Shown here: piece by piece, positions 431 through 58,750 of the stretch | Layout: each line of letters opens with the position of its first letter | How positions within the stretch are numbered: the first letter of the stretch is position 1 | NCBI RefSeq assembly: GCF_006345805.1 | Contig: NC_043010.1 | Location: 57,102,001-57,166,000, forward strand | Direction: 5' to 3' | DNA: 64,000 bases | DNA from: Octopus sinensis | Lineage: Eukaryota | Position numbers and translations under genes: made by a program | The notes under the pieces: generated by a model | The model's database searches: none | The model's input: only the letters and a program-made list of their open reading frames with translations | What the model was told of the DNA's origin: nothing

Positions 431-516
431 AGTGAAACAGCTTTGAGTTATTTATTTTTTCTTTCATCTCTATTTTGCAATGTTTCTTTTTCGTTAAGTG
501 GAAACCAACATATTTT

Positions 517-6212: not shown

Positions 6213-6265
6213 CTATCGCCCCACCACCATACATATCTCTATGAGATATTTAGAAATTTAATATT

Positions 6266-6311
<46 letters not shown>

Positions 6312-9167: not shown

Positions 9168-10692
9168 TTATTCATCATAGTCCTCCAGGCAATAACATAG
9201 GAATTCAAAACGGGTTGCCCCTGGGAGCTCCTCTATGCTGATGACCTGGCCCTCATAGCAGAATCCCTACCAGAACTAGAAAAGAAATTTCGGATGTGGA
9301 AGCAAGGTCTAGAATCAAAAGGCCTTAGAGTCAATCTAGCAAAGACCAAAGTTCTAGTAAGTAGGAAAGCAAACTCATCACCCCCCCCTCAGGTAGGTGG
9401 CCCTGCTTGATCTGTAGAAAAGGTATAGGTAGAAACTCCATAAGATGTACCCAGTATAAGCTATGGATACAAGAGGTGCAGCAACATCAAAGGAAGATTA
9501 ACCGAGAAGATAGCTTTCATGTGCAGCAGATGCAAAGGGATAATAAACACCGCAGATGCTCAGAAATCAGATTTCATCACACTCCAGGGCGAGAAACTAG
9601 AATTAGTTGATGGCTTCTGTTACCTAGGTGACCAAGTTAGTAGTGGGGGTGGATGCTCAGAGAGTGTTACCACTAAAATAAGAATAGCCTGGGCGAAGTT
9701 TAGAAAGCTTCTGCCCTACTGGTTACAAAGGGCCTCTCGCTCAGAGTGAAAAGTAGATTGTACGATGCATGTGTGCGAACTGCCATGCTTCACAGTAGTG
9801 AAACATGGGCTGTGACTGCGGAGGACATGCGTAGACTCGAAAGAAATGAAGTTAGCATGATCCACTGGATGTATAATGTCAGTGTGCACACATGACAGAG
9901 TGTTAGCGTCCTGAGAGAAATGTTGGACATAAGAAGCATCGGATGTGGCATGCAAGAGAGACGTTTGTGCTGGTATGGTCATGTACTACGAATAGATACA
10001 GAGAGATGTGAGAAGTGCCACTCCCAAACAGTTGAAGGAATTCAGGGTAGAAGTAGACCCAGGAAGACATGGGATGAGGTGGTCAAGCATGACCTTCAAA
10101 CGTTGGGCCTCACAGAGGCAATGACGAAAGACCGAGACCTCTAGAGATATGCTGTGACTGCGAAGGCCCGGCAAATAAAATGAGTTCATGGCTGTATCCT
10201 TCACCAGTTTTGCATAACCAGCCCCAGCCCATTCAAAAGTACCTTGGATCGTAGGGCAACCTGCTGTGCTTACCTTTGATTGTAGGGTGACCTGCTGTGC
10301 TTGAGAAGACCTATTGAGTCAAGTACATCGACATCAAATTAAAAATCAAATGGAAATTGTAGCTGTGATCCCTGTGCCGGTGGCAAGTAAAAAGCACCAT
10401 CCAAACATGGCCGATGCCAGCACCGCCTTGGCTGGCTTCCGTGCCAATGGCATGTAAAAAGCACCAACCGATTGTGGCCATTGCCAGCCTCCTCTGGCCC
10501 CTGTGCTGGTGGCACGTAAAAAGCACGCACTACACTCACAGAGTGGTTGGCGTTAGGAAGGGTATCCAGTTGTAGAAACACTGCCAGATCAGACTGGTGC
10601 CTGGTGCAGTCTCCTGGCTTCTTAGACCCCAGTCAAACCATCCAACCCATGCTAGCATGGAAAACAGACGTTAAACGATGATAATGATGATT
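9151..10692 (+). mobile_element. 5'-truncated RTE-clade LINE with complete 3' UTR, antisense in intron 1 of the PAN gene
   Basis: LSSLLFIIVLQAIT*EFKTGCPWELLYADDLALIAES (YADD at about 9233), FCYLGD, RPRKTWDEVVKHD; 3' UTR with repeated ggcacgtaaaaagcac motifs ending ccatccaacccatgctagcatggaaaacagacgttaaac(gat)n. Confidence 0.93.
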
Positions 10693-10995
10693 ATAGTTAC
10701 TGTGACATTGATATCACTCTTTGCCTAGAAGTGGCCTATGGACCCTACTTGTGTGTGTGTGTGTGGGGGGGGATTTGGGGTGAAGGGAAAAACAGAAGCA
10801 AAGAAGTTTTGTTGTTTAATTTATTGTGGAGTCAGAGTTCAAGGTTCAAACATTTGTGATGTTAGTGCTGTAAGACTGTGCTTTGGTGGCTTGACACTGT
10901 TGTAATAGTGTCGTGGTGAATGTGTCAAACACTAAGTTATTGTGTGAAGGGGTTTAAGACTAAAGCAAACAGTTATAGGGAAGGATCACACTTAC

Positions 10996-11302
10996 CATTC
11001 TTTGAGACAAATGTTTCTGCTTGTCTGTTGGTTGTTTTCTGTATGGTGACATTATCTTGCCATATATGGAAATATTGGCATTGCCGTTCACTAGATTTGT
11101 AGGTGAAGTATTCACAGTCATTCACTGAACACATTTGGGCACATTGAAATTTGCTGGTGGCTTTATGAATAACTTTGGCTGGATCAGTTGACTGGATTAT
11201 GTAACCTTCTAATCGGTGAAAATGGTAACTAGTCGACATCTGCTCACATATTATTCCAATAATGGTACAAAGCAACACTGGGATTGTTGGATTCCTCAAC
11301 AT
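10996..11302 (-). CDS. Coding exon 1 of PAN-domain gene (signal peptide + PAN/Apple domain)
   Basis: MLRNPTIPVLLCTIIGIICEQ (hydrophobic N-terminus), then ATSKFQCAQMCSVNDCEYFTYKSSERQCQYF (PAN C...C....C..F.Y......C pattern). Ends AATG|GTAAGT (phase 1); an acceptor (ctacag) lies just upstream of the ATG, implying a 5' UTR exon. Confidence 0.88.
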
Positions 11303-21223: not shown

Positions 21224-21816
21224 GTAAGAAGAGCCTTAACACCTCAAACTTTATTTCATCTCAAGTTTAAATTTACTGCTTCAGTCATTAGGCTAAGCCC
21301 ATACTGGGGCACTGCCTTCATATGTTTTATTCAATCTTGTTCATCTCACTCTGAATGTTTCATATATTATTTATTGATCTCGATTTATTGAATGGTTAAG
21401 TTATATATATATATCATCGTTTAACCCATACTAGCATGGTCAGATGATTTGACCAGTGCTGGTAAGGCTAGGGGCCACACCATTGTCTGTTCTGGCATTG
21501 TTTCTATGGCTGAGTGCCCTTCCTAATAGCAACCACCCTGCAAAGTGTGCTGGGCACTTTATATATAGTACCAGTATGTGTTTTTCATGTGGCACCCTGC
21601 TGTGGTGGGTGGGTCTTTTTGAGTAAAGTAAGCTGCTCAGTCCTTAGTCATCTCCTTCGTCAGGCTCAGTGTTTTGAGATCAGCCTTCAATACTTCACCT
21701 CCTGTCCTCCTGGGTCTCCCTCTTCTACAAATTCCATCCACTTTAAGTGATCAACACTTCTGCACGCAACTGTCTACATCCATACACATCACATGACTAA
21801 ACCAGCACAAAATACA

Positions 21817-24951: not shown

Positions 24952-25240
24952 CTAGCATCACCTGACTGGCATCCGTGTCGGTGGCACCTAAAAGCACCAA
25001 CCGATCATCGCAATTTGCCAGCCTGCGCTGGCTCCTGTGCCGGTGGCACGTAAAAAACACCCACTACACTCACGGAGTGGTTGCTTTAGGAAGAACATCC
25101 AGCTGTAGAAACACTGCCAAATCAGACTGGAGCCTGGTGTAGCCTCCATGGCTTACCAGACCCCGGTCGAACCATCCAACCCATGCTAGCATGGAAAACG
25201 GACGTTAAATGATGATGATGATATATATATGTATACATAT

Positions 25241-25318
<78 letters not shown>

Positions 25319-26138: not shown

Positions 26139-26809
26139 GGCGCAGGAGTGGCTGTGTGTTAAGTAGTTTGCTTACCAACAACATTGATCCGGGTTCAGTC
26201 CCACTGTGTGGCACCTTGGGCAAATGTCTTCTACTATAGCCTCAGGCTGGCCAAAGCCTTGTGAGTGGGTTTGGTAGACAGAAACTGAAAGAAGCCTGTT
26301 GTATATATGTATATATATATATATATATATATGCGTGTGTGTGTTTGTATGTCTGTGTTTGTCCCCGCCAACATCGTTTGACAACTGATGCTGGTGTGTT
26401 TATGTCCCTGTAACTTAGCAGTTCAGCAAAAGAGACCAATAGAATAAGTACTAGGCTTACAAAGAATAAGTCCTGGGGTTGATTTGCTTGACAAAAGTCG
26501 GTGCTCCAGCATGACCACAGTCAAATGACTGAAACAAGTAAAAAATAAAAAAAACATACATATACTTATACACACACATCCCTATCAGTTTGTCTACGTC
26601 ACTCTGTGTCTTCCTGTCTCTGCTTATATTTGTCTGTCTGTTTGTCTCACTGACCCGTTGCCATGGAAATGGGAAATCCAAGATGCTGCATAATCATTCC
26701 AATGTCATATTCCTTACACTTTCCAAACTTGAATGTCTTCTCAGCAGACCTCTCCCTTCTGACTAACATTAGGGTGATGCTTAGGTCAATATTAGGGGTT
26801 TATGGGTGT

Positions 26810-26844
<35 letters not shown>

Positions 26845-27858
26845 ACACACACACACACACACATTCATACACACATGTGCGCATGCACACACATATTCTT
26901 GCACACAAACTCACACACACATTCACACACATATTCACATACACACACACACTCACTCACAAACACACACACACATTCATACACATACACATGCATGCAC
27001 ACACATTTACACACACATTCTCACACACATACATTCATACACATATACGCATGCACACACACACATTCACACACACACACATGAACACATTCACACGCAT
27101 ATTCACATACACACACACACTCACAAACACACACACACATTCATACACATACACACGTATGCACACACATATTCACACACACACGTTCACACACACATTC
27201 TCACACACATACATTCATACACATACACACATGTTCATACATAGATATGCACACACACACGCACATTCACACACACACATACACACACCACACACACACA
27301 CATACACACTCACAAACACACACACACATACACACACCACACATACACACACACACACTATTGTTTCCTCTCTTATTAAAAATATTCTACATTTGTTTCA
27401 CCAGTTCCAGATGATGGACACACCCATCATGAACACCATCAACACGAAGGTAAGACATTTATCTTTGAGCTCCAGCAACCAGTTGAATAAACCCCTAGCA
27501 ACCACCTGAACAGACCCCCTAGCAACTAGTTCACTGAACCCTAGCAGTTATCTTCAGGTGGTTAAGTAGCTCTGAAATTGTCTGTAAACCACAGGTAATA
27601 GGGGTCCAGTTGGTCCTCTTACTTTATACCTTTACAATGTTAATTGGTCATTTTGGTCAACAAAGCCAGAATTCCATTGGTCATGGATTGGTTCTGTGTT
27701 TTACTGAAACCTGAAAAGCATGTAAGGAGTGGGGTCTTCCCACTAGAATGGACAAAAGTGCTAATATATGATATATGATTTATAAAAGCATGTAACATAC
27801 TAATAAATATCTGTAAATATAAAACCATCCAGATTTCTGAGTACCTCATTTCTTCTAA

Positions 27859-27893: not shown

Positions 27894-28246
27894 TTAGGAG
27901 GAAAAAGAAAATGGATATTGTGAAGTTGATAAATATTTATTATTAACAACAAATCAATCATTATCAGTTATGAGGCTAACATAACCTCTAATCGTGTTTG
28001 ATCTCCATGTGTCTAACACGCGTGGACATGCCTACAAAGTCAGAAAACAACACAGCTCCCATGACTTTCGGAAACATTTTTTCACGCTCAGAGTTGCTGA
28101 AGCATGGAACAAACTGCCTGTGTCAGTTGTTGACTGCCATGACACTGCATCTTTTAAGGCCCTCATGCTTTCCGAAATCCACCGAAACTACACCTGATTA
28201 TATATACACTTTAGATGAGTTGTAGTGCACCTGAGCACTGTACACA

Positions 28247-29734: not shown

Positions 29735-30396
29735 CATATATATATATAATAATATTAGGGAGTATGGCTCCAAACTTACAGGGAAAAATTAGATTTTGTA
29801 TTAAATCAAATTTCACAGTATAAAATATGAATTAGAGATAAAACCACTATTAGGCAACTCAAACACAAATTTACAAAATAACCAAGTTTGGATTTTGTGA
29901 TTTTCCAATGTCATAATTGGTAAAGAATTTTAATTAATGAATCTTTAAATATTTTCAGATGAGTCACACCATCAAGGAGGTAAGGGAACCATATTTTATA
30001 AATATGTGTGTGTGTGTGAATGCATGTTAGTATGTGTGAATGTGTGTATATATATGTGTATGTGTGAATGTGTGTTAGTGTGTGTGTGTTTAAAGGAAAA
30101 GAAAAGGGACAGGAAGAGAAGCTATCATATTAAATAAATAAACACAGTGAGTCGATGTTGACAGTGTAAATGCATTTTGCAGAGGTGAGCGTGTGGAGAG
30201 AGTGTCTCAGTGTTCTTTCACTTGGAGATAATACAATAATGTCTACTTAAGAATTTGGACAGTGCTATCATGTCCACAGGGTTCCATTAATCCTAAATAT
30301 CAGCCCCTGATTTAATTTCTTTCTAATCCTTTCCAATTTTTCCCTTTTCTCATGTTGTCTGTTTATTTCCTTTCAGAAGCTCAACCATCGAATTGA
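21169..30396 (+). CDS. Six-exon micro-exon gene for a 66-aa secreted His-rich peptide: MRLTAALVFLVAFALIVGVQSGPLPDDGHTHHEHHQHEGNCNHGNHQHHHDHDHESHHQGEAQPSN
   Basis: Exons 21169-21223, 24740-24754, 27405-27449, 28440-28484, 29959-29979, 30377-30396 (55+15+45+45+21+20 = 201 nt); canonical Yn-cag acceptors and GTAAG/GTGAG donors, all phase 1, one open frame; AATAAA near 30549. Confidence 0.82.
21937..22584 (+). mobile_element. Non-autonomous Helitron 5' portion
   Basis: Starts TC (tctcttattataaaaggcag) right after a (TA)n run; directly precedes the second Helitron. Confidence 0.5.
22585..23415 (+). mobile_element. Internally deleted Helitron with PIF1 helicase remnant
   Basis: KLFTNMRAH...AILAPRNK...YPIEVLN...LKLKVSAPIMLIRNL (PIF1 motifs, frameshifted); 3' hairpin gccccgagcaacgccgggc followed by CTAG|T at 23412-23416. 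Confidence 0.9.
23523..23750 (+). mobile_element. tRNA-derived SINE family B
   Basis: ggcaaccagctaacagaatagttagc...gttcaaattccactgaggtcgactttgcctttcatcctttcgggg...(att)n; relatives at 29030, 49220, 56575 and 60815. Confidence 0.85.
23752..24130 (-). mobile_element. R4/Dong-like LINE 3' end between (TAA)n tracts
   Basis: EKLSKYNDLEIEVTRMWNLKTETISIIVGALGMIKK...IQKIALLGTAHILRRTLS*. Confidence 0.85.
24740..24754 (+). CDS. His-rich peptide exon 2 (15-nt micro-exon, VQSGP)
   Basis: ttttttattctttttacag|TTCAGTCTGGTCCTC|gtaagt; supplies the likely V-Q-S signal cleavage site. Confidence 0.78.
24955..25222 (+). mobile_element. RTE 3' UTR fragment
   Basis: Same sequence as 10400-10690; further copies near 6312-6410, 17655-17790, 21415-21600, 41851-42133, 56745-56925 and 58392-58750. 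Confidence 0.88.
25896..26105. repeat. Long fold-back with a 58-bp perfect core and about 90-bp arms
   Basis: 25931-25988 is the exact reverse complement of 26003-26060; 14-nt loop; AT-rich outer arms also pair. Confidence 0.95.
26139..26548 (+). mobile_element. tRNA-derived SINE family A, full length
   Basis: ggcgcaggagtggctgtgtg... through gtcaaatgactgaaacaagtaaaaaataaa. Confidence 0.9.
26810..27358. repeat. Degenerate (CA)n/(CACAT) microsatellite ending about 45 nt before exon 3
   Basis: Direct reading of the sequence. Confidence 0.95.
27405..27449 (+). CDS. His-rich peptide exon 3 (LPDDGHTHHEHHQHE)
   Basis: tttgtttcaccag|TTCCAG ATGATGG...CACGAAG|gtaaga; in-frame alternative acceptor at 27411. 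Confidence 0.8.
27990..28272 (+). mobile_element. CR1-clade LINE 3' end
   Basis: TRGHAYKVRKQHSSHDFRKHFFTLRVAEAWNKLP (CR1 C-terminal motif) with (att)n tail; tail-only copy at about 24840. Confidence 0.88.
28440..28484 (+). CDS. His-rich peptide exon 4 (GNCNHGNHQHHHDHD)
   Basis: ttctttaatttcag|GAAATTGT...CACGATC|gtgagt. Confidence 0.82.
29030..29155 (-). mobile_element. SINE family B fragment
   Basis: Reverse complement of ccgaggttgactttgcctttcatccttttgaggtcgataaattaagtaccagttgcg. Confidence 0.8.
29185..29335 (-). mobile_element. SINE family A 5' fragment
   Basis: Reverse complement of ggctgtgtggtaagatgctttcttcccaaccacacggtcc...ggcagacggaaactgaaaaaagccc. Confidence 0.8.
29959..29979 (+). 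CDS. His-rich peptide exon 5 (21-nt micro-exon, HESHHQG)
   Basis: attttcag|ATGAGTCACACCATCAAGGAG|gtaagg. Confidence 0.78.
30377..30396 (+). CDS. His-rich peptide terminal exon (EAQPSN*)
   Basis: gtttatttcctttcag|AA GCT CAA CCA TCG AAT TGA; AATAAA about 150 nt downstream. Confidence 0.72.
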
Positions 30397-30598
30397 CCAG
30401 ATCAGCCAATAATGTTGGAAAGATGACCAGATCAGCCAATAATGTTATATTTAATGGCAACACATTAAATAAGATTGTTAAAGAGACAGACTTCAGTGTT
30501 CCTGATCATCATCTTTCCACCTCTTTATAACCGATATTACAACAGTTCAATAAATATTGATTGTCAACAAATTAACGTTTGATGTTTTGTGTGTGCAC

Positions 30599-30630
<32 letters not shown>

Positions 30631-31180
30631 GCACGTGTGTGTGTGTGGGCGTGTGTGCTAGAGTATCTAAGTGGCTGATATTTGAAGTCCCTCCTTAAGG
30701 TGTCCACCCCATACCAAATAATTTCTTAAATTAAACAAGTCTATTAACTCTTATTTACTTATTCAGCTTCCATTAATTTATAAGCAAATTATCTCACTTA
30801 TCCTTCCTACATGTTATTTTGCTTAGGTTTGCCACATGGTAACATGGCTACATGTGTTGTTACTGTGGTATACTATTGGTTACAGGATAACATGCGTTTT
30901 TGGCTATACGGCCACATATCTTTACAAACGTACAATATTGTCCACATGTATATCTCTATAGCAGTGTTTCTCAACTGTTTTACCCTTGCGTAACCCTTAA
31001 AATAAATTACATATCTCAAGGAAATCCTGCAAAAGAAAACTATATACTATATCATTCTCATATTCTTTCATCATAGTTTATTTGGTAAATATCATGTATA
31101 AGTAAAAGCAATGTATACGCGCACCTGGTGTTTAGGGTTGGAATTTTTGTTACACCAATAATGGGTGTAACAAAGGTCTT

Positions 31181-34100
31181 TCTGGGATGAGGTGGTGAAG
31201 CATGAAGAGGTAGACCCAGGAAGACCTCGGATGAGGTGGTGAAGCATGAAGAGGTAGACCCAGGAATTCCTGGGATGAGGTGGTGAAGCATGAAGAGGTA
31301 GACCCAGGAAGACCTGGGATGAGGTGGTGAAGCATGAAGAGGTAGACCCAGGAAGACCTCGGATGAGGTGGTGAGCATGAAGAGGTAGACCAGGAATTCC
31401 TGGGATGAGGTGGTGAAGCATGAAGAGGTAGACCCAGGAAGATCTGGGAGAGGTGGTGAAGCATGAAGAGGTAGACTCAGGAAGACCTGGGAGAGGTGGT
31501 GAAGCAGCAGGTAGGAGAGGTAGACCCAGGAATTCTGGGATGATGTGGTGAAGCATGAAGAGTAGACCCAGGAAGACCTGGGATGATGGTGTGTGAAGCA
31601 TGAAGAGGTAGACCCAGGAAGACCTCGGATGAGGTGGTGAAGCATGAAGAGGTAGACCCAGGAATTCCTGGGATGAGGGGGTGAAGCATGAAGAGGTAGA
31701 CCCAGGAAGACCTGGGATGAGGTGGTGAAGCATGAAGAGGTAGACCCAGAAGACCTGGATGAGGTGGTGAAGCATGAAGAGTAGACCCAGGAATTCCTGG
31801 GATGAGGTGGTGAAGCATGAAGAGTAGACCCAGGAAGATCTGGGATGAGGTGGTGAAGCATGAAGAGGTAGAGACTCAGGAATTCCTGGATGAGGTGGTG
31901 AATGAATGGTGAAGCATGAAGAGGTAGACCCAGGAAGACCTGGGATGAGGTGGTGAAGCATGAAGAGGTAGACCCAGGAATTCCTGGGATGAGGTGGTGA
32001 AGCATGAAGAGGTAGACCCAGGAATTCCTGGGATGAGGTGGTGAAGCATGAAGAGGTAGACCCAGGAATTCCTGGGATGAGGTGGTGAAGCATGAAGAGG
32101 TAGACCCAGGAAGACCTGGGATGAGGTGGTGAAGCATGAAGAGGTAGACCCAGGAATTCCTGGGATGAGGTGGTGAAGCATGAAGAGGTAGACCCAGGAA
32201 TTCCTGGGATGAGGTGGTGAAGCATGAAGAGGTAGACCCAGGAATTCCTGGGATGATGTGGTGAAGCATGAAGAGGTAGACCCAGGAAGACCTGGGATGA
32301 GGTGGTGAAGCATGAAGAGGTAGACCCAGGAATTCCTGGGATGAGGTGGTGAAGCATGAAGAGGTAGACCCAGGAATTCCTGGGATGAGGTGGTGAAGCA
32401 TGAAGAGGTAGACCCAGGAATTCCTGGGATGTGATGAGGTGGTGAGATGATGAATGTTGTGAAGCAGAAAAGGTAGACCCAGGAAGACCTGGGATGATGG
32501 GTGGTGAAGCATGAAGAGGTAGACCCAGGAAGATCTGGGATGAGGTGGTGAAGCATGAAGAGGTAGACCCAGGAATTCCTGGGATGAGGTGGTGTGAAGC
32601 ATGAAGAGGTAGACCCAGGAAGACCTGGGATGAGGTGGTGAAGCATGAAAAGGTAGACCCAGGAAGACCTGGGATGAGGTGGTGAAGAATGAAGAGGTAG
32701 ACCAGGAATCCTGGGATGAGGTGGTGAAGCATGAAGAGGTAGACCCAGGAATTCCTGGGATGAGGTGGTGAAGCATGAAGAGGTAGACCCAGGAATTCCT
32801 GGGATGAGGTGGTGAAGCATGAAGAGGTAGACCCAGGAAGACCTGGGATGAGGTGGTGAAGCATGAAGAGGTAGACCCAGGAAGACCTGGGATGAGGTGG
32901 TGAAGCATGAAGAGGTAGACCCAGAAGACCTGGGATGAGGTGGTGTGAAGCATGAAGAGGTAGACCCAGGAAGACCTGGGATGAGGTGGTGAAGCATGAA
33001 GAGGTAGACCCAGGAAGACCTGGGATGAGGTGGTGTGAAGCATGAAGAGGTAGACCCAGGAAGATCTGGGATGAGGTGGTGAAGCATGAAAAGGTAGACT
33101 CAGGAAGACCTGGGATGAGGTGGTGAAGCATGAAGAGGTAGACCCAGGAATTCCTGGGATGAGGTGAAGCATGAGAGCATGAAGAGGTAGACCCAGGAAG
33201 ACCTGGGATGAGGTGGTGTGAAGCATGAAAAGGTAGACTCAGGAAGACCTGGGATGAGGTGGTGAAGCATGAAGAGGTAGACCCAGGAATTCCTGGGATG
33301 AGGTGGTGAAGCATGAAGAGGTAGACCCAGGAAGACCAGGGATGAGGTGTGAAGCATGAAGAGGTAGACCCAGGAAGACCTGGGATGAGGTGGTGAAGCA
33401 TGAAGAGGTAGACCCAGGAGACCTGGGATGAGGTGGTGAAGCATGAAGAGGTAGACCCAGGAAGACCTGGGATGAGGTGGTGAAGCATGAAGAGGTAGAC
33501 CCAGGAATTCCTGGGATGAGGTGGTGAAGCATGAAGAGGTAGACCCAGGAAGACCAGGGAGGTGGTGTGAAGACATGAAGAGGAGTAGACCCAGTGTGGA
33601 AAGACCTCGGATGAGGTGGTGAAGCATGAAGAGGTAGAGGTAGACCCAGGAAGACCGGGATGAGGTGGTGAAGCATGAAGAGGTAGACTCAGGAAGACCT
33701 GGGATGAGGTGGTGAAGCATGAGAGGTAGACCCAGGAAGTCTGGGATGAGGTGGTGAAGCATGAAGAGGTAGACCCAGGAAGACCTGGGATGAGGTGGTG
33801 AAGCATGAAGAGGTAGACCCAGAAGATCTGGGATGAGGTGGTGAAGCATGAAGAGGTAGACCCAGGAACCTGGGATGAGGTGGTGAAGCATGAAGAGGTA
33901 GACCCAGGAAGACCTGGATGATGTGGTGAAGCATGAGAGGTAGACCCAGGAAGACCTGGGATGAGGTGGTGAAGCATGAAGAGGTAGAACCAGGAAGACT
34001 GGGATGAGGTGGTGAAGCATGAAAAGGTAGACCCAGACGACCTGGGATGAGGTGGTGAAGCATGAAGAGGTAGACCCAGGAAGACCTGGGATGAGGTGGT

Positions 34101-37100
34101 GAAGCATGAAGAGGTAGACCAGGAATTCCTGGATGAGGTGTGAAGCATGAAGAGGTAGACCCAGGATTCCGGGATGAGGTGGTGAAGCATGAAGAGGTAG
34201 ACCAAGAAGACCTGGGATGATTTGGTGAAGCATGAAGAGGTAGACCCAGGAACCTGGATGAGGTGGTGAAGCATGAAGAGGTAGACCAGGAAGACCTGGG
34301 ATGAGGTGGTGAAGCATGAAGAGGTAGACCCAGGAAGACTGGGATGAGGTGGTGAAGCATGAAGAGGTAGACCCAGAGACCTGGGATGAGGTGGTGAAGC
34401 ATGAAGAGTAGACCCAGGAAGACCTGGGATGAGGTGGTGAAGCATGAAGAGGTAGACCCAGGAAGACCTGGGATGAGGTGGTGAAGCATGAAGAGGTAGA
34501 CCCAGGAAGACCTGGGATGAGGTGGTGAAGCATGAAGAGGTAGACCCAGGAATTCCTGGGATGAGGTGGTGAAGCATGAAGAGGTAGACCCAGGAAGACC
34601 TGGGATGAGGTGGTGAAGCATGAAGAGGTAGACCCAGGAAGACCTGGGATGAAGCATGAAGAGGTAGACCCAGGAATTCCTGGGATGAGGTGGTGAAGCA
34701 TGAAGAGGTAGACCCAGGAAGACCTGGGATGAGGTGGTGAAGCATGAAGAGGTAGACCCAGGAAGACCTGGGATGAGGTGGTGAAGCATGAAGAGGTAGA
34801 CCCAGGAAGACCTGGGATGAGGTGGTGAAGCATGAAGAGGTAGACCCAGGAAGACCTGGGATGAGGTGGTGAGCATGAAGAGGACCCAGGAAGACCTGGG
34901 ATGAGGTGGTGAAGCATGAAGAGGTAGACCCAGGAAGACCTGGGATGAGGTGGTGAAGCATGAAGAGGTAGACCCAGGAAGACCTGGGATGAGGTGGTGA
35001 AGCATGAAGAGGTAGACCCAGGAATTCCTGGGATGAGGTGGTGAAGCATGAAGAGGTAGACCCAGGAAGACCTGGGATGAGGTGGTGAAGCATGAAGAGG
35101 TAGACCCGGAAGACCTGGGATGAGGTGGTGAAGCATGAAGAGGTAGACCCAGGAAGACCTGGGATGAGGTGGTGAAGCATGAAGAGGTAGACCCAGGAAG
35201 ACCTGGGATGAGGTGGTGAAGCATGAAGAGGTAGACCCAGGAAGACCTGGGATGAGGTGGTGAAGCATGAAGAGGTAGACCCAGGAATTCCTGGGATGAG
35301 GTGGTGAAGCATGAAGAGGTAGACCCAGGAAGACCTGGGATGAGGTGGTGAAGCATGAAGAGGTAGACCCAGGAAGACCTGGGATGAGGTGGTGAAGCAT
35401 GAAGAGGTAGACCAGGAAGACCTGGGATGAGGTGGTGAAGCATGAAGAGGTAGACCCAGGAAGACCTGGGATGAGGTGGTGAAGCATGAAGAGGTAGACC
35501 CAGGAATTCCTGGGATGAGGTGGTGAAGCATGAAGAGGTAGACCCAGGAAGACCTGGGATGAGGTGGTGAAGCATGAAGAGGTAGACCCAAGAACCTGGA
35601 TGAGGTGGTGAAGCATGAAGAGGTAGACCCGGAAGACCTGGGATGAGGTGGTGAAGCATGAAGAGGTAGACCCAGGAAGACCTGGGATGAGGTGGTGAAG
35701 CATGAAGAGGTAGACCCAGGAAGACCTGGGATGAGGTGGTGAAGCATGAAGAGGTAGACCCAGGAATTCCTGGGATGAGGTGGTGAAGCATGAAGAGGTA
35801 GACCCAGGAAGACCTGGGATGAGGTGGTGAAGCATGAAGAGGTAGACCCAGGAAGACCTGGGATGAGGTGGTGAAGCATGAAGAGGTAGACCCAGGAAGA
35901 CCTGGGATGAAGCATGAAGAGGTAGACCCAGGAATTCCTGGGATGAGGTGGTGAAGCATGAAGAGGTAGACCCAGGAAGACCTGGGATGAGGTGGTGAAG
36001 CATGAAGAGGTAGACCCAGGAATTCCTGGGATGAGGTGGTGAAGCATGAAGAGGTAGACCCAGGAATTCCTGGGATGAGGTGGTGAAGCATGAAGAGGTA
36101 GACCCAGGAAGACCTGGGATGAGGTGGTGAAGCATGAAGAGGTAGACCCAGGAAGACCTGGGATGAGGTGGTGAAGCATGAAGAGGTAGACCCAGGAAGA
36201 CCTGGGATGAGGTGGTGAAGCATGAAGAGGTAGACCCAGGAAGACCTGGGATGAGGTGGTGAAGCATGAAGAGGTAGACCCAGGATACCTGGGATGTGGT
36301 GAAGCATGAAGAGGTAGACCCAGGAATTCCTGGGATGAGGTGGTGAAGCATGAAGAGGTAGACCCAGGAAGACCTGGGATGAGGTGGTGAAGCATGAAGA
36401 GGTAGACCCAGGAAGACCTGGGATGAGGTGGTGAAGCATGAAGAGGTAGACCCAGGAAGACCTGGGATGAGGTGGTGAAGCATGAAGAGGTAGACCCAGG
36501 AATTCCTGGGATGAGGTGGTGAAGCATGAAGAGGTAGACCCAGGAATTCCTGGGATGAGGTGGTGAAGCATGAAGAGGTAGACCCAGGAAGACCTGGGAT
36601 GAGGTGGTGAAGCATGAAGAGGTAGACCCAGGAAGACCTGGGATGATGTGGTGAAGCATGAAGAGGTAGACCCAGGAAGACCTGGGATGAGGTGGTGAAG
36701 CATGAAGAGGTAGACCCAGGAAGACCTGGGATGAGGTGGTGAAGCATGAAGAGGTAGACCCAGGAAGACCTGGGATGAGGTGTGAAGCATGAAGAGGTAG
36801 ACCCAGGAAGACCTGGGATGAGGTGGTGAAGCATGAAGAGGTAGACCCAGGATCCTGGATGAGGTGGTGAAGCATGAAGAGGTAGACCCAGGAAGACCTG
36901 GGATGAGGTGGTGAAGCATGAAGAGGTAGACCCAGGAAGACCTGGGATGAGGTGGTGAAGCATGAAGAGGTAGACCCAGGAATTCCTGGGATGAGGTGGT
37001 GAAGCATGAAGAGGTAGACCCAGGAAGACCTGGGATGAGGTGGTGAAGCATGAAGAGGTAGACCCAGGAAGACCTGGGATGAGGTGGTGAAGCATGAAGA

Positions 37101-40100
37101 GGTAGACCCAGGAAGACCTGGGATGAGGTGGTGAAGCATGAAGAGGTAGACCCAGGAAGACCTGGGATGAGGTGGTGAAGCATGAAGGTAGACCCAGGAA
37201 GACCTGGGATGAGTGGTGAAGCATGAAGAGGTAGACCCAGGAAGACCTGGGATGAGGTGTGAAGCATGAAGAGGTAGACCCAGGAAGACCTGGGATGAGG
37301 TGGTGAAGCATGAAGAGGTAGACCCAGGAAGACCTGGGATGAGGTGGTGAAGCATGAAGAGGTAGACCCAGGAAGACCTGGGATGAGGTGGTGAAGCATG
37401 AAGAGGTAGACCCAGGAAGACCTGGGATGAGGTGGTGAAGCATGAAGAGGTAGACCCAGGAAGACCTGGGATGAGGTGGTGAAGCATGAAGAGGTAGACC
37501 CAGGAAGACCTGGGATGAGGTGGTGAAGCATGAAGAGGTAGACCCAGGAAGACCTGGGATGAGGTGGTGAAGCATGAAGAGTAGACCCAGAAGACCTGGG
37601 ATGAGGTGGTGAAGCATGAAGAGGTAGACCCAGGAAGACCTGGGATGAGGTGTGAAGCATGAAGAGGTAGACCCAGGAAGACCTGGGATGAGGTGGTGAA
37701 GCATGAAGAGGTAGAGACCCAGGAAGACCTGGGATGAGGTGGTGAAGCATGAAGAGGTAGACCCAGGAACCTGGGATGAGGTGGTGAAGCATGAAGAGGT
37801 AGACCCAGGAAGACCTGGGATGAGGTGGTGAAGCATGAAGAGGTAGACCCAGGAAGACCTGGGATGAGGTGGTGAAGCATGAAGAGGTAGACCAGGAAGA
37901 CCTGGGATGAGGTGGTGAAGCATGAAGAGGTAGACCCAGGAAGACCTGGGATGAGGTGGTGAAGCATGAAGAGGTAGACCCAGGAAGACCTGGGATGTGG
38001 TGAAGCATGAAGAGGTAGACCCAGAAGACCTGGGATGAGGTGGTGAAGCATGAAGAGGTAGACCCAGGAAGACCTGGGATGAGGTGGTGAAGCATGAAGA
38101 GGTAGACCAAGGAAGACCTGGGATGAGGTAGTGAAGCATGAAGAGGTAGACCCAGAAAGACTGGGATGAGGTGGTGAAGCATGAAGAGGTAGACCCAGGA
38201 AGACCTGGGATGAGGTGGTGAAGCATGAAGAGGTAGACCCAGGAAGACCTGGGATGAGGTGGTGAAGCATGAAGAGGTAGACCCAGGAAGACCTGGGATG
38301 AGGTGGTGAAGCATGAAGAGGTAGACCCAGGAAGACCTGGGATGAGGTGGTGAAGCATGAAGAGGTAGACCCAGGAAGACCTGGGATGAGGTGGTGAAGC
38401 ATGAAGAGGTAGACCCAGAAGACCTGGGATGAGGTGGTGAAGCATGAAGAGGTAGCCCAGGAAGACCTGGGATGAGGTGGTGAAGCATGAAGAGGTAGAC
38501 CCAGGAGACCTGGGATGAGGTGGTGAAGCATGAAGAGGTAGACCCAGAAGACCTGGGATGAGGTGGTGAAGCATGAAGAGGTAGACCCAGGAAGACCTGG
38601 GATGAGGTGGTGAAGCATGAAGAGGTAGACCCAGGAAGACCTGGGATGAGGTGGTGAAGCATGAAGAGGTAGACCCAGGAAGACCTGGGATGAGGTGTGT
38701 GAAGCATGAAGAGGTAGACCCAGGAAGACCTGGGATGAGGTGGTGAAGCATGAAGAGGTAGACCCAGGAGACCTGGGATGAGGTGGTGAAGCATGAAGAG
38801 GTAGACCCAGGAAGCCTGGGATGAGGTGGTGAAGCATGAAGAGGTAGACCCAGGAAGACCTGGGATGAGGTGGTGAAGCATGAAGAGGTAGACCCAGGAA
38901 GACCTGGGATGAGGTGGTGAAGCATGAAGAGGTAGACCCAGGAAGACCTGGGATGAGGTGGTGAAGCATGAAGAGGTAGACCCAGGAAGACCTGGGATGA
39001 GGTGGTGAAGCATGAAGAGGTAGACCCAGGAAGACCTGGGATGAGGTGGTGAAGCATGAAGAGGTAGACCCAGGAAGACCTGGGATGAGGTGGTGAAGCA
39101 TGAAGAGGTAGACCCAGGAAGACCTGGGATGAGGGGTGAAGCATGAAGAGGTAGACCCAGGAAGACCTGGGATGAGGTGGTGAAGCATGAAGAGGTAGAC
39201 CCAGGAAGACCTGGGATGAGGTGGTGAAGCATGAAGAGGTAGACCCAGGAAGACCTGGGATGAGGTGGTGAAGCATGAAGAGGTAGACCCAGGAATTCCT
39301 GGGATGAGGTGGTGAAGCATGAAGAGGTAGACCCAGGAAGACCTGGGATGAGGTGGTGAAGCATGAAGAGGTAGACCCAGGAAGACCTGGGATGAGGTGG
39401 TGAAGCATGAAGAGGTAGACCCAGAAGACCTGGGATGAGGTGGTGAAGCATGAAGAGGTGACGCCAGGAAGACCTGGGATGAGGTGGTGAAGCATGAAGA
39501 GGTAGACCCAGGAAGACCTGGGATGAGGTGGTGAAGCATGAAGAGGTAGACCCAGGAAGATCCTGGATGAGGTGGTGAAGCATGAAGAGGTAGACCCAGG
39601 AAGACCTGGGATGAGGTGGTGAAGCATGAAGAGGTAGACCCAGGAAGACCTGGGATGAGGTGGTGAAGCATGAAGAGGTAGACCCAGGAAGACCTGGGAT
39701 GAGGTGGTGAAGCATGAAGAGGTAGACCCAGGAAGACCTGGGATGAGGTGGTGAAGCATGAAGAGGTAGACCCAGGAAGATCTGGGATGAGGTGGTGAAG
39801 CATGAAGGTAGACCCAGGAAGACCTGATGAGGTGGTGAAGCATGAAGAGGTAGACCCAGGAAGACCTGGGATGAGGTGGTGAAGCATGAAGAGGTAGACC
39901 CAGGAAGACCTGGGATGAGGTGGTGAAGCATGAAGAGGTAGACCCAGGAAGACCTGGGATGAGGTGGTGAAGCATGAAGAGGTAGACCCAGGAAGACCTG
40001 GGATGAGGTGGTGAAGCATGAAGAGGTAGACCCAGGAAGACCTGGGATGAGGTGGTGAAGCATGAAGAGGTAGACCCAGGAAGACCTGGGATGAGGTGGT

Positions 40101-41260
40101 GAAGCATGAAGAGGTAGACCCAGGAAGACCTGGGATGAGGTGGTGAAGCATGAAGAGGTAGACCCAGGAAGACCTGGGATGAGGTGGTGAAGCATGAAGA
40201 GGTAGACCCAGGAAGACCTGGGATGAGGTGGTGAAGCATGAAGAGGTAGACCCAGGAAGATCTGGGATGAGGTGGTGAAGCATGAAGAGGTAGACCCAGG
40301 AAGACCTGGGATGAGGTGGTGAAGCATGAAGAGGTAGACCCAGGAAGACCTGGGATGAGGTGGTGAAGCATGAAGAGGTAGACCCAGGAAGACCTGGGAT
40401 GAGGTGGTGAAGCATGAAGAGGTAGACCCAGGAAGACCTGGGATGAGGTGGTGAAGCATGAAGAGGTAGACCCAGGAAGACCTGGGATGAGGTGGTGAAG
40501 CATGAAGAGGTAGACCCAGGAAGACCTGGGATGAGGTGGTGAAGCATGAAGAGGTAGACCCAGGAATTCCTGGGATGAGGTGGTGAAGCATGAAGAGGTA
40601 GACCCAGGAAGACCTGGGATGAGGTGGTGAAGCATGAAGAGGTAGACCCAGGAAGACCTGGGATGAGGTGGTGAAGCATGAAGAGGTAGACCCAGGAAGA
40701 CCTGGGATGAGGTGGTGAAGCATGAAGAGGTAGACCCAGGAAGACCTGGGATGAGGTGGTGAAGCATGAAGAGGTAGACCCAGGAAGACCTGGGATGAGG
40801 TGGTGAAGCATGAAGAGGTAGACCCGGAAGACCTGGGATGAGGTGGTGAAGCATGAAGAGGTAGACCCAGAAGACCTGGGATGAGGTGGTGAAGCATGAA
40901 GAGGTAGACCCAGAAGACCTGGGATGAGGTGGTGAAGCATGAAGAGGTAGACCCAGGAAGATCTGGGATGAGGTGGTGAAGCATGAAGAGGTAGACCCAG
41001 GAAGACCTGGGATGAGGTGGTGAAGCATGAAGAGGTAGACCCAGGAGACCTGGGATGAGGTGGTGAAGCATGAAGAGGTATACCCAGGAAGACCTGGGAT
41101 GAGGTGGTGAAGCATGAAGAGGTAGACCCAGGAAGACCTGGGATGAGGTGGTGAAGCATGAAAGGTAGACCCAGGAATTCCTGGGATGAGGTGGTGAAGC
41201 ATGAAGAGGTAGACCCAGGAAGACCTGGGATGAGGTGGTGAAGCATGAAGAGGTAGAACC
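31181..41260 (+). repeat. 10-kb satellite array of a 44-bp RTE-derived monomer (about 230 copies)
   Basis: Consensus AGAGGTAGACCCAGGAAGACCTGGGATGAGGTGGTGAAGCATGA, head to tail without spacers; 41/44 identical to RTE positions 10049-10092. Confidence 0.98.
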
Positions 41261-41600
41261 GTATACAATATGATAGTAAGTTATATGTGGGTGCAACAAA
41301 AAACAATATGAAACAGAGACTTAATTGTTGTAACTTTACATTTAGAAACAGAATTAGGAGAAATTCTACAGGGTTAAGTAGCTACATATGGGAACTTAAG
41401 AATGGGGGAATTAATTATAATTTACAAATTAATATCAGCACCTGCGTACAATAATAAAAATAGAAAATGTTTATTATGCTTTAATGAAATACTTTTTCTA
41501 ATTGGGGCTAAACTTCCGCTTATTAACAACTGTAAGGGACATAAAGTTTTCTGTCTTCATAAAATTGGGTATACCTTTTCCAAATACATATAGAACCTAG
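41261..41600 (+). mobile_element. Penelope-like element GIY-YIG endonuclease remnant abutting the satellite
   Basis: KLYVGATKNNMKQR...RNSTGLSSYIWELKN..INYN [frameshift] ISAPAYNNKNRKCLLCFNE matches the PLE pattern YIG.T...K.R / NST.LS.YIW.LK / Y.N....C.LC..E. Confidence 0.75.
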
Positions 41601-41692
41601 TATTAAAATACCCCAACTGACATAATAATAATTATTTAGAGTTAACCATTGTTACTATATATATTGTATTATGTAATATGGGATAATTATGC

Positions 41693-41735
<43 letters not shown>

Positions 41736-41850
41736 TATATAAGAAGTATATATTAAGTTAGATATAATTATATAATTATATACATACATGTATACGGGAG
41801 TATTTATTACTATAGATACTACTTCTGCATTTATATATCGAAATAAATAT

Positions 41851-42133
41851 CAAATGGAAATTGTAGTTGTGATACCTGTGCCGGTGGTATGTAAAAAGCA
41901 CCATCCGAATGTGACCAATGCCAGCGCTGTCCTGACTGGCTTCCATGCTGGTGGCACATAAAAAGCACCCACTACACTCATGGAGTGGTTGGCGTTAGGA
42001 AGGGCATCCAGCTGTAGAAACACTGCCAGATTAGACTGGTGCCTGGTGCAGCCTCCTGGCTTCCCAGACACCGGACGAACTGTCCAACCCATACTAGTGT
42101 GGAAAGCGGATGTTAAACGATGATGGTGATGAT
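41851..42133 (+). mobile_element. RTE 3' UTR fragment
   Basis: atcaaatggaaattgtagttgtgatacctgtgccggtgg...gatgttaaacgatgatgg, homologous to 10345-10690. Confidence 0.88.
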
Positions 42134-42708
42134 TATGTATATGAATATAGACTATGATATGCAACCCCATTATAGAACCAATGGTTGGATTGATTGATTG
42201 ATTAATTAGTTAATCAATTAATGAATTCATAATTTAATTGATTGGTTGGCTGATTAATAAGTTGAGCTAATTAAATCTAGAGCTACCTCCCTTGGTTTTA
42301 TTTATAAATAAACCCCGAACTCCACGGCATCTCTTAAATATAACATTAAAAGTAATTAGATAAATAAATAGATGGATAGATATTTTGAAGGACTAAATGA
42401 CTTAGGGGTTTATTAATTAATTGACTTAACAATATTACTTGGAATCTTGCATTTTAGGCATTTTGTCAGATATAATAGATTTGAAGGAATTTTGAGCGTA
42501 ATTTTACACCCAAAATAAACATGTTGAGACAATATATACGGTCACTTTTGATGTTTTATCCCTCCTTTGAGTTTGGTCCAACTGGCTTCCGGCATGTATT
42601 TTTAACCATATGGTACCCATATAAGTTAGTAAATATATTAATGATTTCCCTAGTTAGACTTATACATGTAATATTTTATAAGGGTCTTTTAAAATAAATT
42701 TGTAATAC

Positions 42709-43355
42709 AGCCAGGATCCCTGGCCTGGTGGTACGTAAAAAGCACTATCCGACTCGGGGCCGTGGCACGTAAAATACTCCAATGCGACCGTACGACAGGC
42801 ACCCATGCCAACCCCCTTTGCTTGTGAAGACATGTTGGGGCAAGCGAAATCGAAATCGAATTGAACCAGCCAGGATCCCTGGTCTGGTGGTACGTAAAAA
42901 GCACTATCCGACTCGTGGCCGTGGCACGTAAAATACTCCAATGCGACCGTACGACTGGCACCCTTGCCAACCCCCTTTGCTTGTGAAGACATGTTGGGGC
43001 AAGCGAAATCGAAATCGAATTGAACCAGCCAGAATCCCTGGTCTGGTGGTACGTAAAAAGCACTATCCGACTCGTGGCCGATGCCAGCACCGCCTCGACT
43101 GGCTTCCGTGCCGGTGGCACATAAAATACACCAATCTGACTGTGGCCGTTGCCAGCCCCGCCTGGCACCTGTGCAGGTGGCACGTAAAAAGCACCCACTA
43201 CACTCACGGAGTGGTTGGCGTTAGGAAGGGCATCCAGCTGTAGAAACATTGCCAAATTAGACTGGAGCCTGGTGCAGCCTTCTGGCTTCCCAGAACCCCG
43301 GTCGAACCGTCCAACCCATGCTAGCATGGAGAACGGACGTTAAACGACGATGATT
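42709..43355 (+). mobile_element. Young RTE 3' UTR copy with 2.3 tandem copies of a 159-bp unit
   Basis: Units start at 42709, 42868 and 43027 (agccaggatccctgg...gaaatcgaattgaacc); CpG-rich; canonical tail acggacgttaaacgacgatg. Confidence 0.9.
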
Positions 43356-49513: not shown

Positions 49514-49954
49514 CAAGGGTGAGTCATGCCATTTTGGTTAGGACAGGTATAATTACCAACACAGGAACATGTATCATACATCAAAAGGAAGCTGGTCCTC
49601 TGTGGATCACATCCCTACTTCTCAACATAGTCACCATTTCTCTCAATAATTTAGCGCTTTCAGACCATCATCTCTTTGGCCCCATGAAAGAGGCAAAACA
49701 TTATTCCAGTGATGAGGAAGTGAAAACTGTAGTGAAGAAGTGGCTCAAAGAACAGTCAACAGAATTTTATGGGGCAGGGATACATGCTCTCATTCGAAGG
49801 TGGAACATTGCTATTAAGAGAAATGGTGACTATGTTGAGAAGTAGGGATGTGATCCAGAGAGGACCAGCTTCATTTTGATGTATGATACATGTTCCTGTG
49901 TTGGTAATTATATCTGTGCTAACCAAAATGGCATTACTTTTTCACTCACCCTCG
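49514..49954 (+). mobile_element. Internally deleted mariner element with TIRs and TA TSD
   Basis: TA|caagggtgagtca..tgccattttggttag ... ctaaccaaaatggcattactttttcactcaccctcg|TA; peptide LSDHHLFGPMKE...YSSDEEVKTVVKKWL...FYGAGIHALIRRWNIAIKRNGDYVEK. Confidence 0.9.
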
Positions 49955-58391: not shown

Positions 58392-58750
58392 TATCATCAT
58401 CATCATCATCATCATCATTTAACGTCCGCTTTCCATGCTAGCATGGGTTGGACGGTTTTAACTGAGGGCTGGCAACCAGATGGCTGCACCAAGCTTCAAT
58501 CTTGATCTGGCAGAGTTTCTACAGCTGGATGCCCTTCCTAACGCCAACCACTCCGAGAGTGTAGTGGGTGCTTTTTACGTTCCACCTGCACGGGGGCCAG
58601 TCAGGTGGTACTGGCCATGACCTAGCTCGAATCTTTTTACACATGCCACCGGCACAGGTGCCAGTAAGGCAACACTGGTAGCGATCATGCTCGAACGGTG
58701 TCTTTTACGTGCCACTGGCACAGAGGCCAGATAGCTGCTCTGGCAACGAT
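58392..58750 (-). mobile_element. RTE 3' UTR fragment
   Basis: (cat)n ttaacgtccgctttccatgctagcatgggttggacgg...cttttacgtgccac motifs. Confidence 0.88.

What the first reader, a model, noticed from the sequence alone, without database searches (positions are those of the whole stretch)
31181..41260. A 10-kb satellite amplified from 44 bp of an RTE LINE coding region
Seen: monomer AGAGGTAGACCCAGGAAGACCTGGGATGAGGTGGTGAAGCATGA matches the RTE at 10049-10092 at 41/44 nt; that segment encodes RGRPRKTWDEVVKH near the ORF C-terminus. No other RTE sequence flanks the array, so only this segment was amplified, to about 230 copies. It begins about 630 bp downstream of the His-peptide poly(A) signal. Established: TE-derived satellites are known, mostly from LTRs, UTRs or Helitron-internal repeats. 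Inference: a young LINE-ORF-derived satellite that could yield small RNAs against the abundant RTE family or spread heterochromatin towards the neighbouring gene.
Basis: partly seen in the sequence, partly recalled or inferred. Interest (0 to 1): 0.82.

Follow-up and report, generated by a model that had tools for sequence, protein, structure and literature searches.

The report
Octopus tandem array born from LINE gene
A 10-kb run of about 230 head-to-tail copies of a 44-base unit in the Octopus sinensis genome was copied from a conserved coding piece of a LINE retrotransposon; the array is real in this assembly, but it belongs to a known kind of TE-derived satellite and no function is shown.

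Summary
Window 31182-41257 is one + strand tandem array, period 44, about 230 copies, 110 of them identical to the consensus. Its only relative elsewhere in the window is 10049-10092 (41/44), inside a decayed, 5'-truncated LINE copy that carries a reverse-transcriptase domain. The segment encodes the conserved C-terminal motif GRPRKTW, so the LINE is the donor. An outgroup element shows that two of the three differences are decay of the local copy, so the donor was another, more consensus-like copy. The array flanks carry no LINE sequence, no terminal inverted repeats and no target-site duplication.

The window is Octopus sinensis CM016872.1:57,102,001-57,166,000.

New points:
- The array is almost free of CpG and is 72% purine on the + strand.
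- It has no higher-order repeat, but diversity falls about six-fold from left to right.
- Much of the variation is 1-bp deletions, likely long-read consensus error.
- The likely satellite-side change (A21C) and the main variant (GA->TT) both increase dyad symmetry, up to a 16-bp perfect palindrome.

LINE-ORF-derived satellites are already described in chicken, hamster and seal. The proposed small-RNA and heterochromatin roles are untested, and the "His-peptide gene" is a (CA)n artefact. Verdict: a new member of a known kind, of modest interest.

The parts
31182..41257 (+). Tandem array of a 44-bp unit, about 230 copies. Consensus: AGAGGTAGACCCAGGAAGACCTGGGATGAGGTGGTGAAGCATGA, in the sense orientation of the LINE ORF. 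It starts at monomer position 21 and ends near position 10.
   Evidence: TRF, exact counts, wrap-around segmentation
31182..34500 (+). Heterogeneous left part of the array. It holds most B variants (GGAATTCC) and the t (C20T), 23C, 11T, 2A and 30T variants, and has many indels. Monomer pairs differ at about 4.6-5.7 positions.
37270..41257 (+). Homogeneous right part of the array, almost purely the consensus 'a' monomer. Monomer pairs differ at about 0.9-1.1 positions.
31259..31274 (.). First of 34 exact copies of the 16-bp perfect palindrome CCCAGGAATTCCTGGG (B variant, contains an EcoRI site). In the 'a' monomers the same place is the 6-bp-stem hairpin CCCAGG-AAGA-CCTGGG (132 exact copies).
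10049..10092 (+). The 44-bp LINE segment homologous to the monomer (41/44). It encodes RSRPRKTWDEVVKH, lies about 240 bp from the element's 3' end, and is present once (not duplicated) in this copy.
9190..10332 (+). 5'-truncated, decayed LINE copy (stops and frameshifts). It contains the reverse-transcriptase tail, a degenerate PHD-like zinc-finger region, a C-terminal region and a 3' UTR with a 31-bp x2 repeat. A SINE follows directly.
31146..31174 (.). Inverted repeat with an 11-bp stem in the unique left flank (TTTGTTACACC / GGTGTAACAAA, 7-nt loop), ending 7 bp before the array. Its relevance is unknown.
   Evidence: read from the sequence, coordinates
31172..31181 (.). Left junction AAAGGTCTTT. 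It contains AGGTCTT, the reverse complement of the monomer's AAGACCT, directly before the array start CTGGG. It may be a fold-back scar or chance.
   Evidence: read from the sequence; not tested statistically

Best explanation
This is a young, locally homogenised, non-coding tandem array (a satellite or large minisatellite) in Octopus sinensis chromosome CM016872.1.

Its 44-bp unit was copied from the part of a LINE retrotransposon ORF that encodes the conserved C-terminal motif GRPRKTW.

The donor was a consensus-like member of the same LINE family, not the decayed copy 21 kb upstream.

Because neither array border carries adjacent LINE sequence, one of two things happened (inferred). Either the seed arrived as a short fragment, for example filler or cDNA captured at a break, or a piece of an array born elsewhere was inserted here.

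The array then grew by ordinary tandem-repeat dynamics: replication slippage and unequal sister-chromatid exchange, possibly rolling-circle amplification (inferred). The most recent expansion was of the pure 'a' monomer in the right 40%.

The monomer core is a quasi-palindrome that has moved towards perfect dyad symmetry. A21C gave a 6-bp stem, and GA->TT gave a 16-bp perfect palindrome. Templated, template-switch mutation predicts exactly these changes (inferred).

No cellular function is indicated. The default reading is neutral or selfish DNA.
For: Array anatomy.

Homology to the LINE: 41/44, E = 4e-13, and the only match in the window.

Direction LINE to satellite: the motif GRGRPRKTW is conserved in homologues with RVT_1 plus PHD, down to 34% identity, including cnidarian proteins.

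Donor is not the local copy: at the three differences, an outgroup element (L002, 72% DNA identity) agrees with the monomer at positions 4 and 36 and with the local copy only at position 21. The local copy's Ser replaces a Gly that is invariant in six homologues.

Flanks: no LINE homology, no terminal inverted repeats or target-site duplication, and both flanks are unique within the window.

Youth and dynamics: 110 of 230 monomers are identical to the consensus, and diversity falls from 5.7 to 0.9 differences per monomer pair from left to right.

Dyad trend:
- Hairpin free energy is -6.8 kcal/mol (z = -3.25) for the monomer, against -4.2 (z = -1.3) for the LINE version.
- A21C ranks 1st of 132 single substitutions for hairpin stability.
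- GA->TT is one of 4 in 8514 double substitutions that give a perfect palindrome of 16 bp or more.

Not coding: there are stops in all + frames, and the open - strand ORFs have no homologues.

Precedents: LINE-ORF2-derived satellites are described in PMC9659126 and PMC6947457.
Against: - Only one locus in one assembly was seen. No reads, no second genome and no genome-wide search were available, so copy number, family size and the mode of origin remain inferences.
- Indels outnumber private substitutions (185 indel bases against about 20). Of 43 single-base deletions, 29 lie in homopolymer runs. Part of the 'variation', and possibly the gradient, could therefore be consensus error of a long-read assembly.
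- The ancestral state at position 21 rests on one decayed copy and a distant outgroup at a synonymous site. The donor subfamily may already have carried C.
- The dyad-symmetry statistics are post hoc.
- No microhomology is visible at the unit boundaries, so simple slippage does not obviously explain the first duplication.
Confidence: 0.7

Rival explanations
1. The array is a functional small-RNA (piRNA or siRNA) source against the LINE family, or a heterochromatin nucleator that affects neighbouring genes.
For: - The unit is 41/44 identical to a LINE coding segment, and probably closer to active copies.
- RTE-type LINEs are reported as recently active, and one as expressed in octopus brain, where a Piwi homologue is also expressed (PMC13282606; PMC9115989).
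Against: - No expression or small-RNA data are available here.
- Rfam finds nothing.
- The array is in the sense orientation and offers only 44 nt of target.
- It is almost free of CpG, so CpG methylation has almost nothing to act on.
- The supposed neighbouring 'His-peptide' gene is a (CA)n ORF. The nearest annotated gene found, the PAN-domain LOC118766143, ends 19.9 kb away.
Confidence: 0.1
2. The array is cargo of, or was delivered by, another mobile element (Helitron-like or other), or is one member of a dispersed satellite family that spreads with such elements.
For: - No LINE sequence lies at the borders, so the array is probably not at its birthplace.
- An inverted repeat with an 11-bp stem ends 7 bp from the left border.
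- Tandem repeats carried by transposable elements are common in molluscs and Drosophila (PMC9659126).
Against: - No terminal inverted repeats, target-site duplication or flank-to-flank similarity were found.
- Both flanks are unique within the 64 kb window.
- The hairpin is A+T-rich, and no matching terminal motif was established.
Confidence: 0.1
3. The array is an assembly artefact: spurious, or strongly expanded or collapsed by the assembler.
For: - Variation is dominated by indels, with 1-bp deletions enriched in homopolymer runs.
- The source is a 2020 long-read assembly with only 86% of its sequence placed in chromosome-scale scaffolds (PMC10700109).
Against: - There are no Ns, and both junctions run into unique sequence.
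- Variation is structured and non-random: the B variant occurs 27 times as an identical string and is clustered at the left, and diversity changes smoothly along the array. A stutter artefact would not be expected to produce this.
Confidence: 0.07
4. The array is an internal tandem repeat of a LINE variant, so members of this family normally carry the segment in multiple copies.
For: The 3' UTR of the local LINE copy does contain a short tandem repeat (31 bp x2).
Against: - The local copy carries the 44-mer once.
- Homologous proteins carry the motif once.
- The array flanks show no LINE homology.
Confidence: 0.03

Closest known systems
Satellites derived from LINE ORF2 segments: chicken HinfI/SCR1 (from CR1), PROsat of Phodopus roborovskii (from L1 ORF2), Pvc20 of the harbour seal (from L1 ORF2). 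Listed in PMC9659126 and PMC6947457.
   Same: The tandem-repeat unit is homologous to an internal coding segment of a non-LTR retrotransposon, and only part of the element was amplified.
   Different: - The unit here is very short (44 bp) and the whole of it is ORF-derived.
- The host is a cephalopod and the donor LINE has RT plus PHD.
- Only one 10-kb locus is known.
- The chromosomal location class (centromeric or not) is unknown.
Common cetacean satellite (from the L1 3' region) and the Drosophila 18HT satellite (from HeT-A/TART)
   Same: A LINE-derived unit expanded into long arrays.
   Different: Those derive mainly from non-coding 3' regions and are abundant, cytologically mapped satellites. 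Abundance is not known here.
Tandem repeats carried by transposable elements in molluscs and insects (the bivalve BIV160/pearl MITE-like elements, central tandem repeats of DINE-1/Helitron)
   Same: Satellite-like arrays linked to mobile elements in a mollusc genome.
   Different: In those cases the repeat is an integral internal part of the element and spreads with it. Here no element ends were found around the array.
Dyad-symmetric (non-B-DNA-prone) satellites, and quasi-palindrome 'correction' by template switching. This comparison rests on my own knowledge (Ripley 1982; Kasinathan and Henikoff 2018), not on papers checked here.
   Same: The monomer core is an inverted repeat. The derived changes are exactly those that copy one arm onto the other.
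   Different: No evidence for cruciform or hairpin formation in vivo, nor for a centromeric role. The stem is short (6 bp, or a 16-bp palindrome in 34 units).

Membership tests
Satellite DNA | Head-to-tail tandem monomers in a long, uninterrupted array | tested here: met
   229.8 copies over 10,076 bp, all in one orientation, with no interspersed sequence
Satellite DNA | High genomic abundance, multiple arrays, or heterochromatic or centromeric location | not testable with these tools
   No eukaryotic genome search was available. There were no further copies in the window and no hits in the metagenome or viral collections. Flanks look euchromatic (SINEs, microsatellites, an annotated gene 20 kb away).
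Satellite DNA | Higher-order repeat structure (a feature of some satellites, not required) | tested here: not met
   Mean difference is flat for lags of 1-8 monomers in every block of the array
TE-derived (LINE-ORF-derived) satellite | Monomer significantly similar to an internal segment of a transposable element | tested here: met
   41/44 identity to 10049-10092, E = 4e-13. Identity is 43/44 to the state inferred with an outgroup.
TE-derived (LINE-ORF-derived) satellite | Direction of derivation is TE to satellite | tested here: met
   The segment encodes GRPRKTW, conserved in RVT_1 plus PHD homologues, including cnidarian proteins. The monomer keeps the invariant Gly that the local copy has lost.
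TE-derived (LINE-ORF-derived) satellite | Transitional forms: the array embedded in, or bordered by, the parent element | tested here: not met
   No LINE homology in either flank. This does not contradict derivation, but it means this locus is not shown to be the birthplace.
RTE clade of non-LTR retrotransposons (the donor element) | Reverse-transcriptase domain | tested here: met
   RVT_1 in the window copy (E = 4e-5, below the gathering score because the copy is truncated) and in homologue P0001 (E = 4e-25)
RTE clade of non-LTR retrotransposons (the donor element) | Single ORF with an N-terminal apurinic/apyrimidinic endonuclease; placement within the RTE clade in an RT phylogeny | not tested
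   The copy is 5'-truncated and no reference LINE library was available. The literature reports RTE-BovB types expanded in cephalopods (PMC10294476) and RTE families in O. vulgaris (PMC13282606), so the label is plausible but unverified.
piRNA cluster or small-RNA source locus | Small RNAs that map to the locus, with the expected strand and size signature | not testable with these tools
   No expression data. No Rfam match.
Tandem repeat carried as cargo by a mobile element (Helitron, MITE or other) | Defined element termini (terminal inverted repeats, target-site duplication, or a hairpin plus CTRR end) and flanks repeated elsewhere | tested here: inconclusive
   No terminal inverted repeats or target-site duplication. 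Flanks are unique within 64 kb. One hairpin lies near the left border. Genome-wide repetition of the flanks could not be tested.

The most novel reading that the evidence does not exclude
The array is transcribed and processed into piRNAs or siRNAs against the most conserved C-terminal coding segment of active RTE-type LINEs of octopus, including brain-expressed ones. A satellite born from a LINE ORF would then act as a dedicated silencing trap.

A second unexcluded novelty: the array was created by reverse-transcriptase end-to-end template jumping, or by polymerase template switching, on a 44-nt fragment. That would explain unit boundaries without microhomology and borders without LINE sequence.
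Probability: 0.08. Interest if true: 0.7.

Novelty: new member of a known kind. Interest (0 to 1): 0.3.

Why it matters
- No paper in the searched library describes cephalopod satellite DNA. A clean, datable case of a LINE coding fragment turning into a tandem array adds a mollusc example to a phenomenon known mostly from vertebrates, insects and plants.
- The two derived steps towards a perfect palindrome offer a small natural series for testing how dyad symmetry arises in young satellites: by mutational template switching or by selection.
- Practical point: the array's minus strand is open in all three frames (ORFs up to 3404 aa), so it can generate false gene models.
- Practical point: its sequence quality marks a stretch where this assembly should be treated with caution.

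Tried and rejected
- **Other arrays through predicted proteins.** I searched with the stop-free minus-strand peptide. The 5.8-billion-protein word-index search found nothing. The full HMMER scan of 1.84 billion representatives gave one marginal hit (E = 2e-5). So no gene caller has reported such an ORF anywhere, but this says little about genomic abundance.
- **Exact-pattern scans.** Scans for the unit in metagenome contigs (two patterns) and in viral contigs gave 0 hits.
- **Literature search for the monomer string.** 0 papers. The supplements of the octopus RTE paper hold no matching sequence.
- **Look-ups of window ORFs as called genes.** The PAN ORF and the (CA)n 'His' ORF are not on record as exact products. 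The organism was identified instead from a 100% match of the PAN ORF to O. sinensis LOC118766143.
- **Higher-order repeat.** Rejected.
- **Chance similarity.** Rejected.
- **Coding function.** Rejected: there are stops in all + frames, and the - strand ORFs have no homologues.
- **Structured RNA.** No Rfam match.
- **Flanks as part of the LINE or of an element with terminal inverted repeats.** Rejected within the limits of the window.
- **Selection for single-strand hairpin stability as the explanation for the B variant.** Not supported. B folds slightly worse than 'a' (-5.8 against -6.8 kcal/mol), which favours a mutational template-switch reading.
Full report
**Observation.** Tandem Repeats Finder reports a single array at 31182-41257 with period 44, 229.8 copies, 93% matches, 3% indels and score 17349. 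The array is 54% G+C in a window that is otherwise 37-38% G+C, and it contains no Ns. A wrap-around dynamic-programming alignment to the cyclic consensus cuts it into 230 full monomers plus two partial ends. The array begins at monomer position 21 (CTGGG…) and ends near position 10. Window 10049-10092 matches the monomer at 41/44. With the array masked, this is the only significant match in the 64 kb (E = 4e-13; the next hit has E = 0.02).

**Where the window comes from.** The ORF at 10973-11302 (-) has a PAN domain and is 100% identical to part of 'uncharacterized protein LOC118766143 [Octopus sinensis]' (P0189). The contig that encodes it is CM016872.1 of GCA_006345805.1, 68.4 Mb long. The fetched locus is 100% identical to window 1-21302 in reverse orientation. 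This places the window at CM016872.1:57,102,001-57,166,000 and the array at about 57,133,182-57,143,257. [quoted passage not shown] That makes the orthologous locus the obvious test, but it could not be run here.

**The donor element.** Window 9190-10332 (+) is a 5'-truncated, decayed LINE copy with several stops and frameshifts.
- It has a reverse-transcriptase tail.
- Its homologues carry RVT_1 followed by a PHD finger.
- The best database relative is only 63% identical.
- The 44-mer lies about 240 bp from the element's 3' end and encodes RSRPRKTWDEVVKH. The monomer encodes RGRPRKTWDEVVKH.
- Six homologues, including cnidarian proteins, all have G-R-P-(R/Q)-(K/M)-T-W at this place, with the Gly invariant.

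The segment is therefore an old, conserved part of the LINE protein, and the satellite is the derivative. It is plausible, because RTE-BovB types are expanded in cephalopods (PMC10294476) and RTE families are recently active in O. vulgaris (PMC13282606; PMC9115989).

**The local copy is not the donor.** I used the contig of P0001 as an outgroup (L002, 72% DNA identity over 993 bp) to polarise the three differences.

| Unit position | Monomer | Local copy | Outgroup |
|---|---|---|---|
| 4 | G | A | G |
| 36 | G | C | G |
| 21 | C | A | A |

Two differences are thus private decay of the local copy; one of them destroys the invariant Gly. Only A21C is a candidate satellite-side change. The donor was a more consensus-like family member. 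The caveat is that position 21 is a synonymous third position and the outgroup is distant.

**Borders.**
- Neither 300-bp flank aligns to the LINE sequence upstream or downstream of the 44-mer better than shuffled controls do.
- The flanks share no direct or inverted similarity with each other, and no target-site duplication is present.
- Window 29800-31181 and 41258-41836 are unique within the window. A SINE with at least seven copies in the window starts at 41837.
- A normal 5'-truncated LINE insertion would leave the element's 3' portion to the right of the array, and it is not there.

So this locus is either not the birthplace, or the seed arrived as a short fragment. That is an inference, not something shown. 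The left flank has two odd features. One is an inverted repeat with an 11-bp stem at 31146-31174. The other is the junction AAAGGTCTTT, which contains the reverse complement of the monomer's AAGACCT. I could not tell whether they matter.

**Internal anatomy.**
- There are 73 distinct monomer strings among the 230. 110 monomers equal the consensus ('a') and 27 are an identical 'B' variant with GA->TT at positions 18-19.
- Differences from the consensus total 131 substituted, 131 deleted and 54 inserted bases. About 110 of the substitutions belong to six shared variants, so private substitutions number only about 20 in 10 kb.
- 43 monomers have a single 1-bp deletion, and 29 of these lie in homopolymer runs, which make up 45% of monomer positions. 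This pattern is typical of long-read consensus error, so true homogeneity is probably higher than 93%.
- There is no higher-order periodicity.
- Diversity falls smoothly from 5.7 differences per monomer pair at the left to 0.9 at the right. Most B variants and nearly all of the minor shared variants lie in the left half. This fits a recent expansion of the 'a' unit on the right, although a gradient in consensus quality cannot be excluded.
- The array has 11 CpG against 545 expected and is 72% purine on the + strand.
- The + strand has stops in all frames. The - strand is open in all three frames, with ORFs up to 3404 aa, but these have no homologues in 5.8 billion or 1.84 billion proteins.
- No Rfam family matches.

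**Dyad symmetry.**
- The monomer core CCCAGG-AAGA-CCTGGG folds as a 6-bp hairpin with -6.8 kcal/mol and z = -3.25. The LINE version CCCAGG-AAGA-CATGGG gives -4.2 kcal/mol and z = -1.3.
- Among all 132 single substitutions of the inferred ancestor, A21C is the most stabilising.
- The B variant turns the core into the 16-bp perfect palindrome CCCAGGAATTCCTGGG, present in 34 exact copies. Only 4 of 8514 possible double substitutions would produce such a palindrome.
- B does not fold better as a single strand (-5.8 kcal/mol).

Both changes are exactly what copying the left arm onto the right arm would give. I therefore favour quasi-palindrome template switching, a mutational mechanism known from my own knowledge and not tested here, over selection. 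These statistics are post hoc.

**Mechanism and verdict.** The supported chain has four links.
1. A 44-bp coding fragment of a consensus-like LINE copy was the seed (shown).
2. It became tandem, and the array at this locus has no LINE borders (shown). How this happened is inferred: fragment capture at a break, or insertion of a piece of an array born elsewhere.
3. It expanded and was homogenised by slippage or unequal exchange, most recently on the right (inferred from the gradient).
4. Its core drifted to dyad symmetry (shown as a pattern; the mechanism is inferred).

Nothing indicates a function. The small-RNA and heterochromatin ideas remain possible but have no support here. The 'His-peptide gene' next door is a (CA)n translation.

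**Comparison with the known.** Reviews list satellites derived from LINE ORF2 segments: chicken HinfI from CR1, PROsat from L1, and seal Pvc20 from L1. They also list others derived from LINE 3' regions (PMC9659126; PMC6947457). I found no paper in the library describing cephalopod satellite DNA and none containing the monomer sequence. The finding is therefore a new member of a known kind. It is well documented at one locus and of modest interest unless the genome-wide, read-level or small-RNA tests listed above turn up something more.

Noticed in passing
window 42708-43080: A 159-bp unit repeated 2.3 times at 97% identity, built from the 5' head module of the local SINE. This is a second, independent TE-derived tandem duplication only 1.45 kb to the right of the array.
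   Followed up: partly
window 10333-10694, 41837-42137, 43034-43352, 25028-25243, 58398-58659(-), 56744-56924(-), 21478-21578(-): A SINE-like repeat of about 260-300 bp with at least seven copies at 70-84% identity. One copy abuts the 3' end of the LINE copy. No Rfam match anywhere in the window.
   Followed up: partly
window 10973-11302 (-); gene span about 4243-11302: PAN-domain exon, 100% identical to O. sinensis LOC118766143. It is the only annotated host gene identified in the window. A receptor-tyrosine-kinase-like gene (fn3, Pkinase) ends about 1.3 kb before the window start.
   Followed up: partly
window about 500-2600 (-): A second LINE copy of a different family (RVT_1). It has an equivalent C-terminal region whose G/R/K-rich stretch is degenerate, and no DNA similarity to the monomer.
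   Followed up: partly
window 31092-41306 (-), 33100-41268 (-), 33689-41299 (-): The minus strand of the array has no stop codon in any frame, giving mechanical ORFs of 3404, 2722 and 2536 aa with no homologues. This is a trap for gene predictors.
   Followed up: yes
window 26663-27509 (+): The 'His-rich' ORFs are translations of a 546-bp imperfect (CA)n microsatellite (26813-27358). No gene with this product is on record.
   Followed up: yes
window 53951-54316 (-), 55060-55365 (-), 49519-49845 (+): Remnants of DNA-transposon genes. Two ORFs are up to 80% identical to a widespread family of about 555-aa proteins that has no Pfam domain; one UniRef entry calls it 'Transposase'. There is also a mariner-like transposase C-terminus, recognised by eye.
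   Followed up: partly
window 27994-28197 (+): This ORF looks like the C-terminal tail of yet another LINE family, judged by eye from the motif (…AEAWNKLP…). Not tested.
   Followed up: no
whole window: Very high microsatellite density: 110 TRF rows, including (ATAG)n of 420 bp, (CA)n of 546 bp and (ATT)n of 248 bp.
   Followed up: no
window 10036-10043 versus the B-variant core: The B variant's AGGAATTC octamer also occurs in the LINE 6 bp upstream of the homologous 44-mer. This could be chance or a trace of the donor context; unresolved.
   Followed up: no
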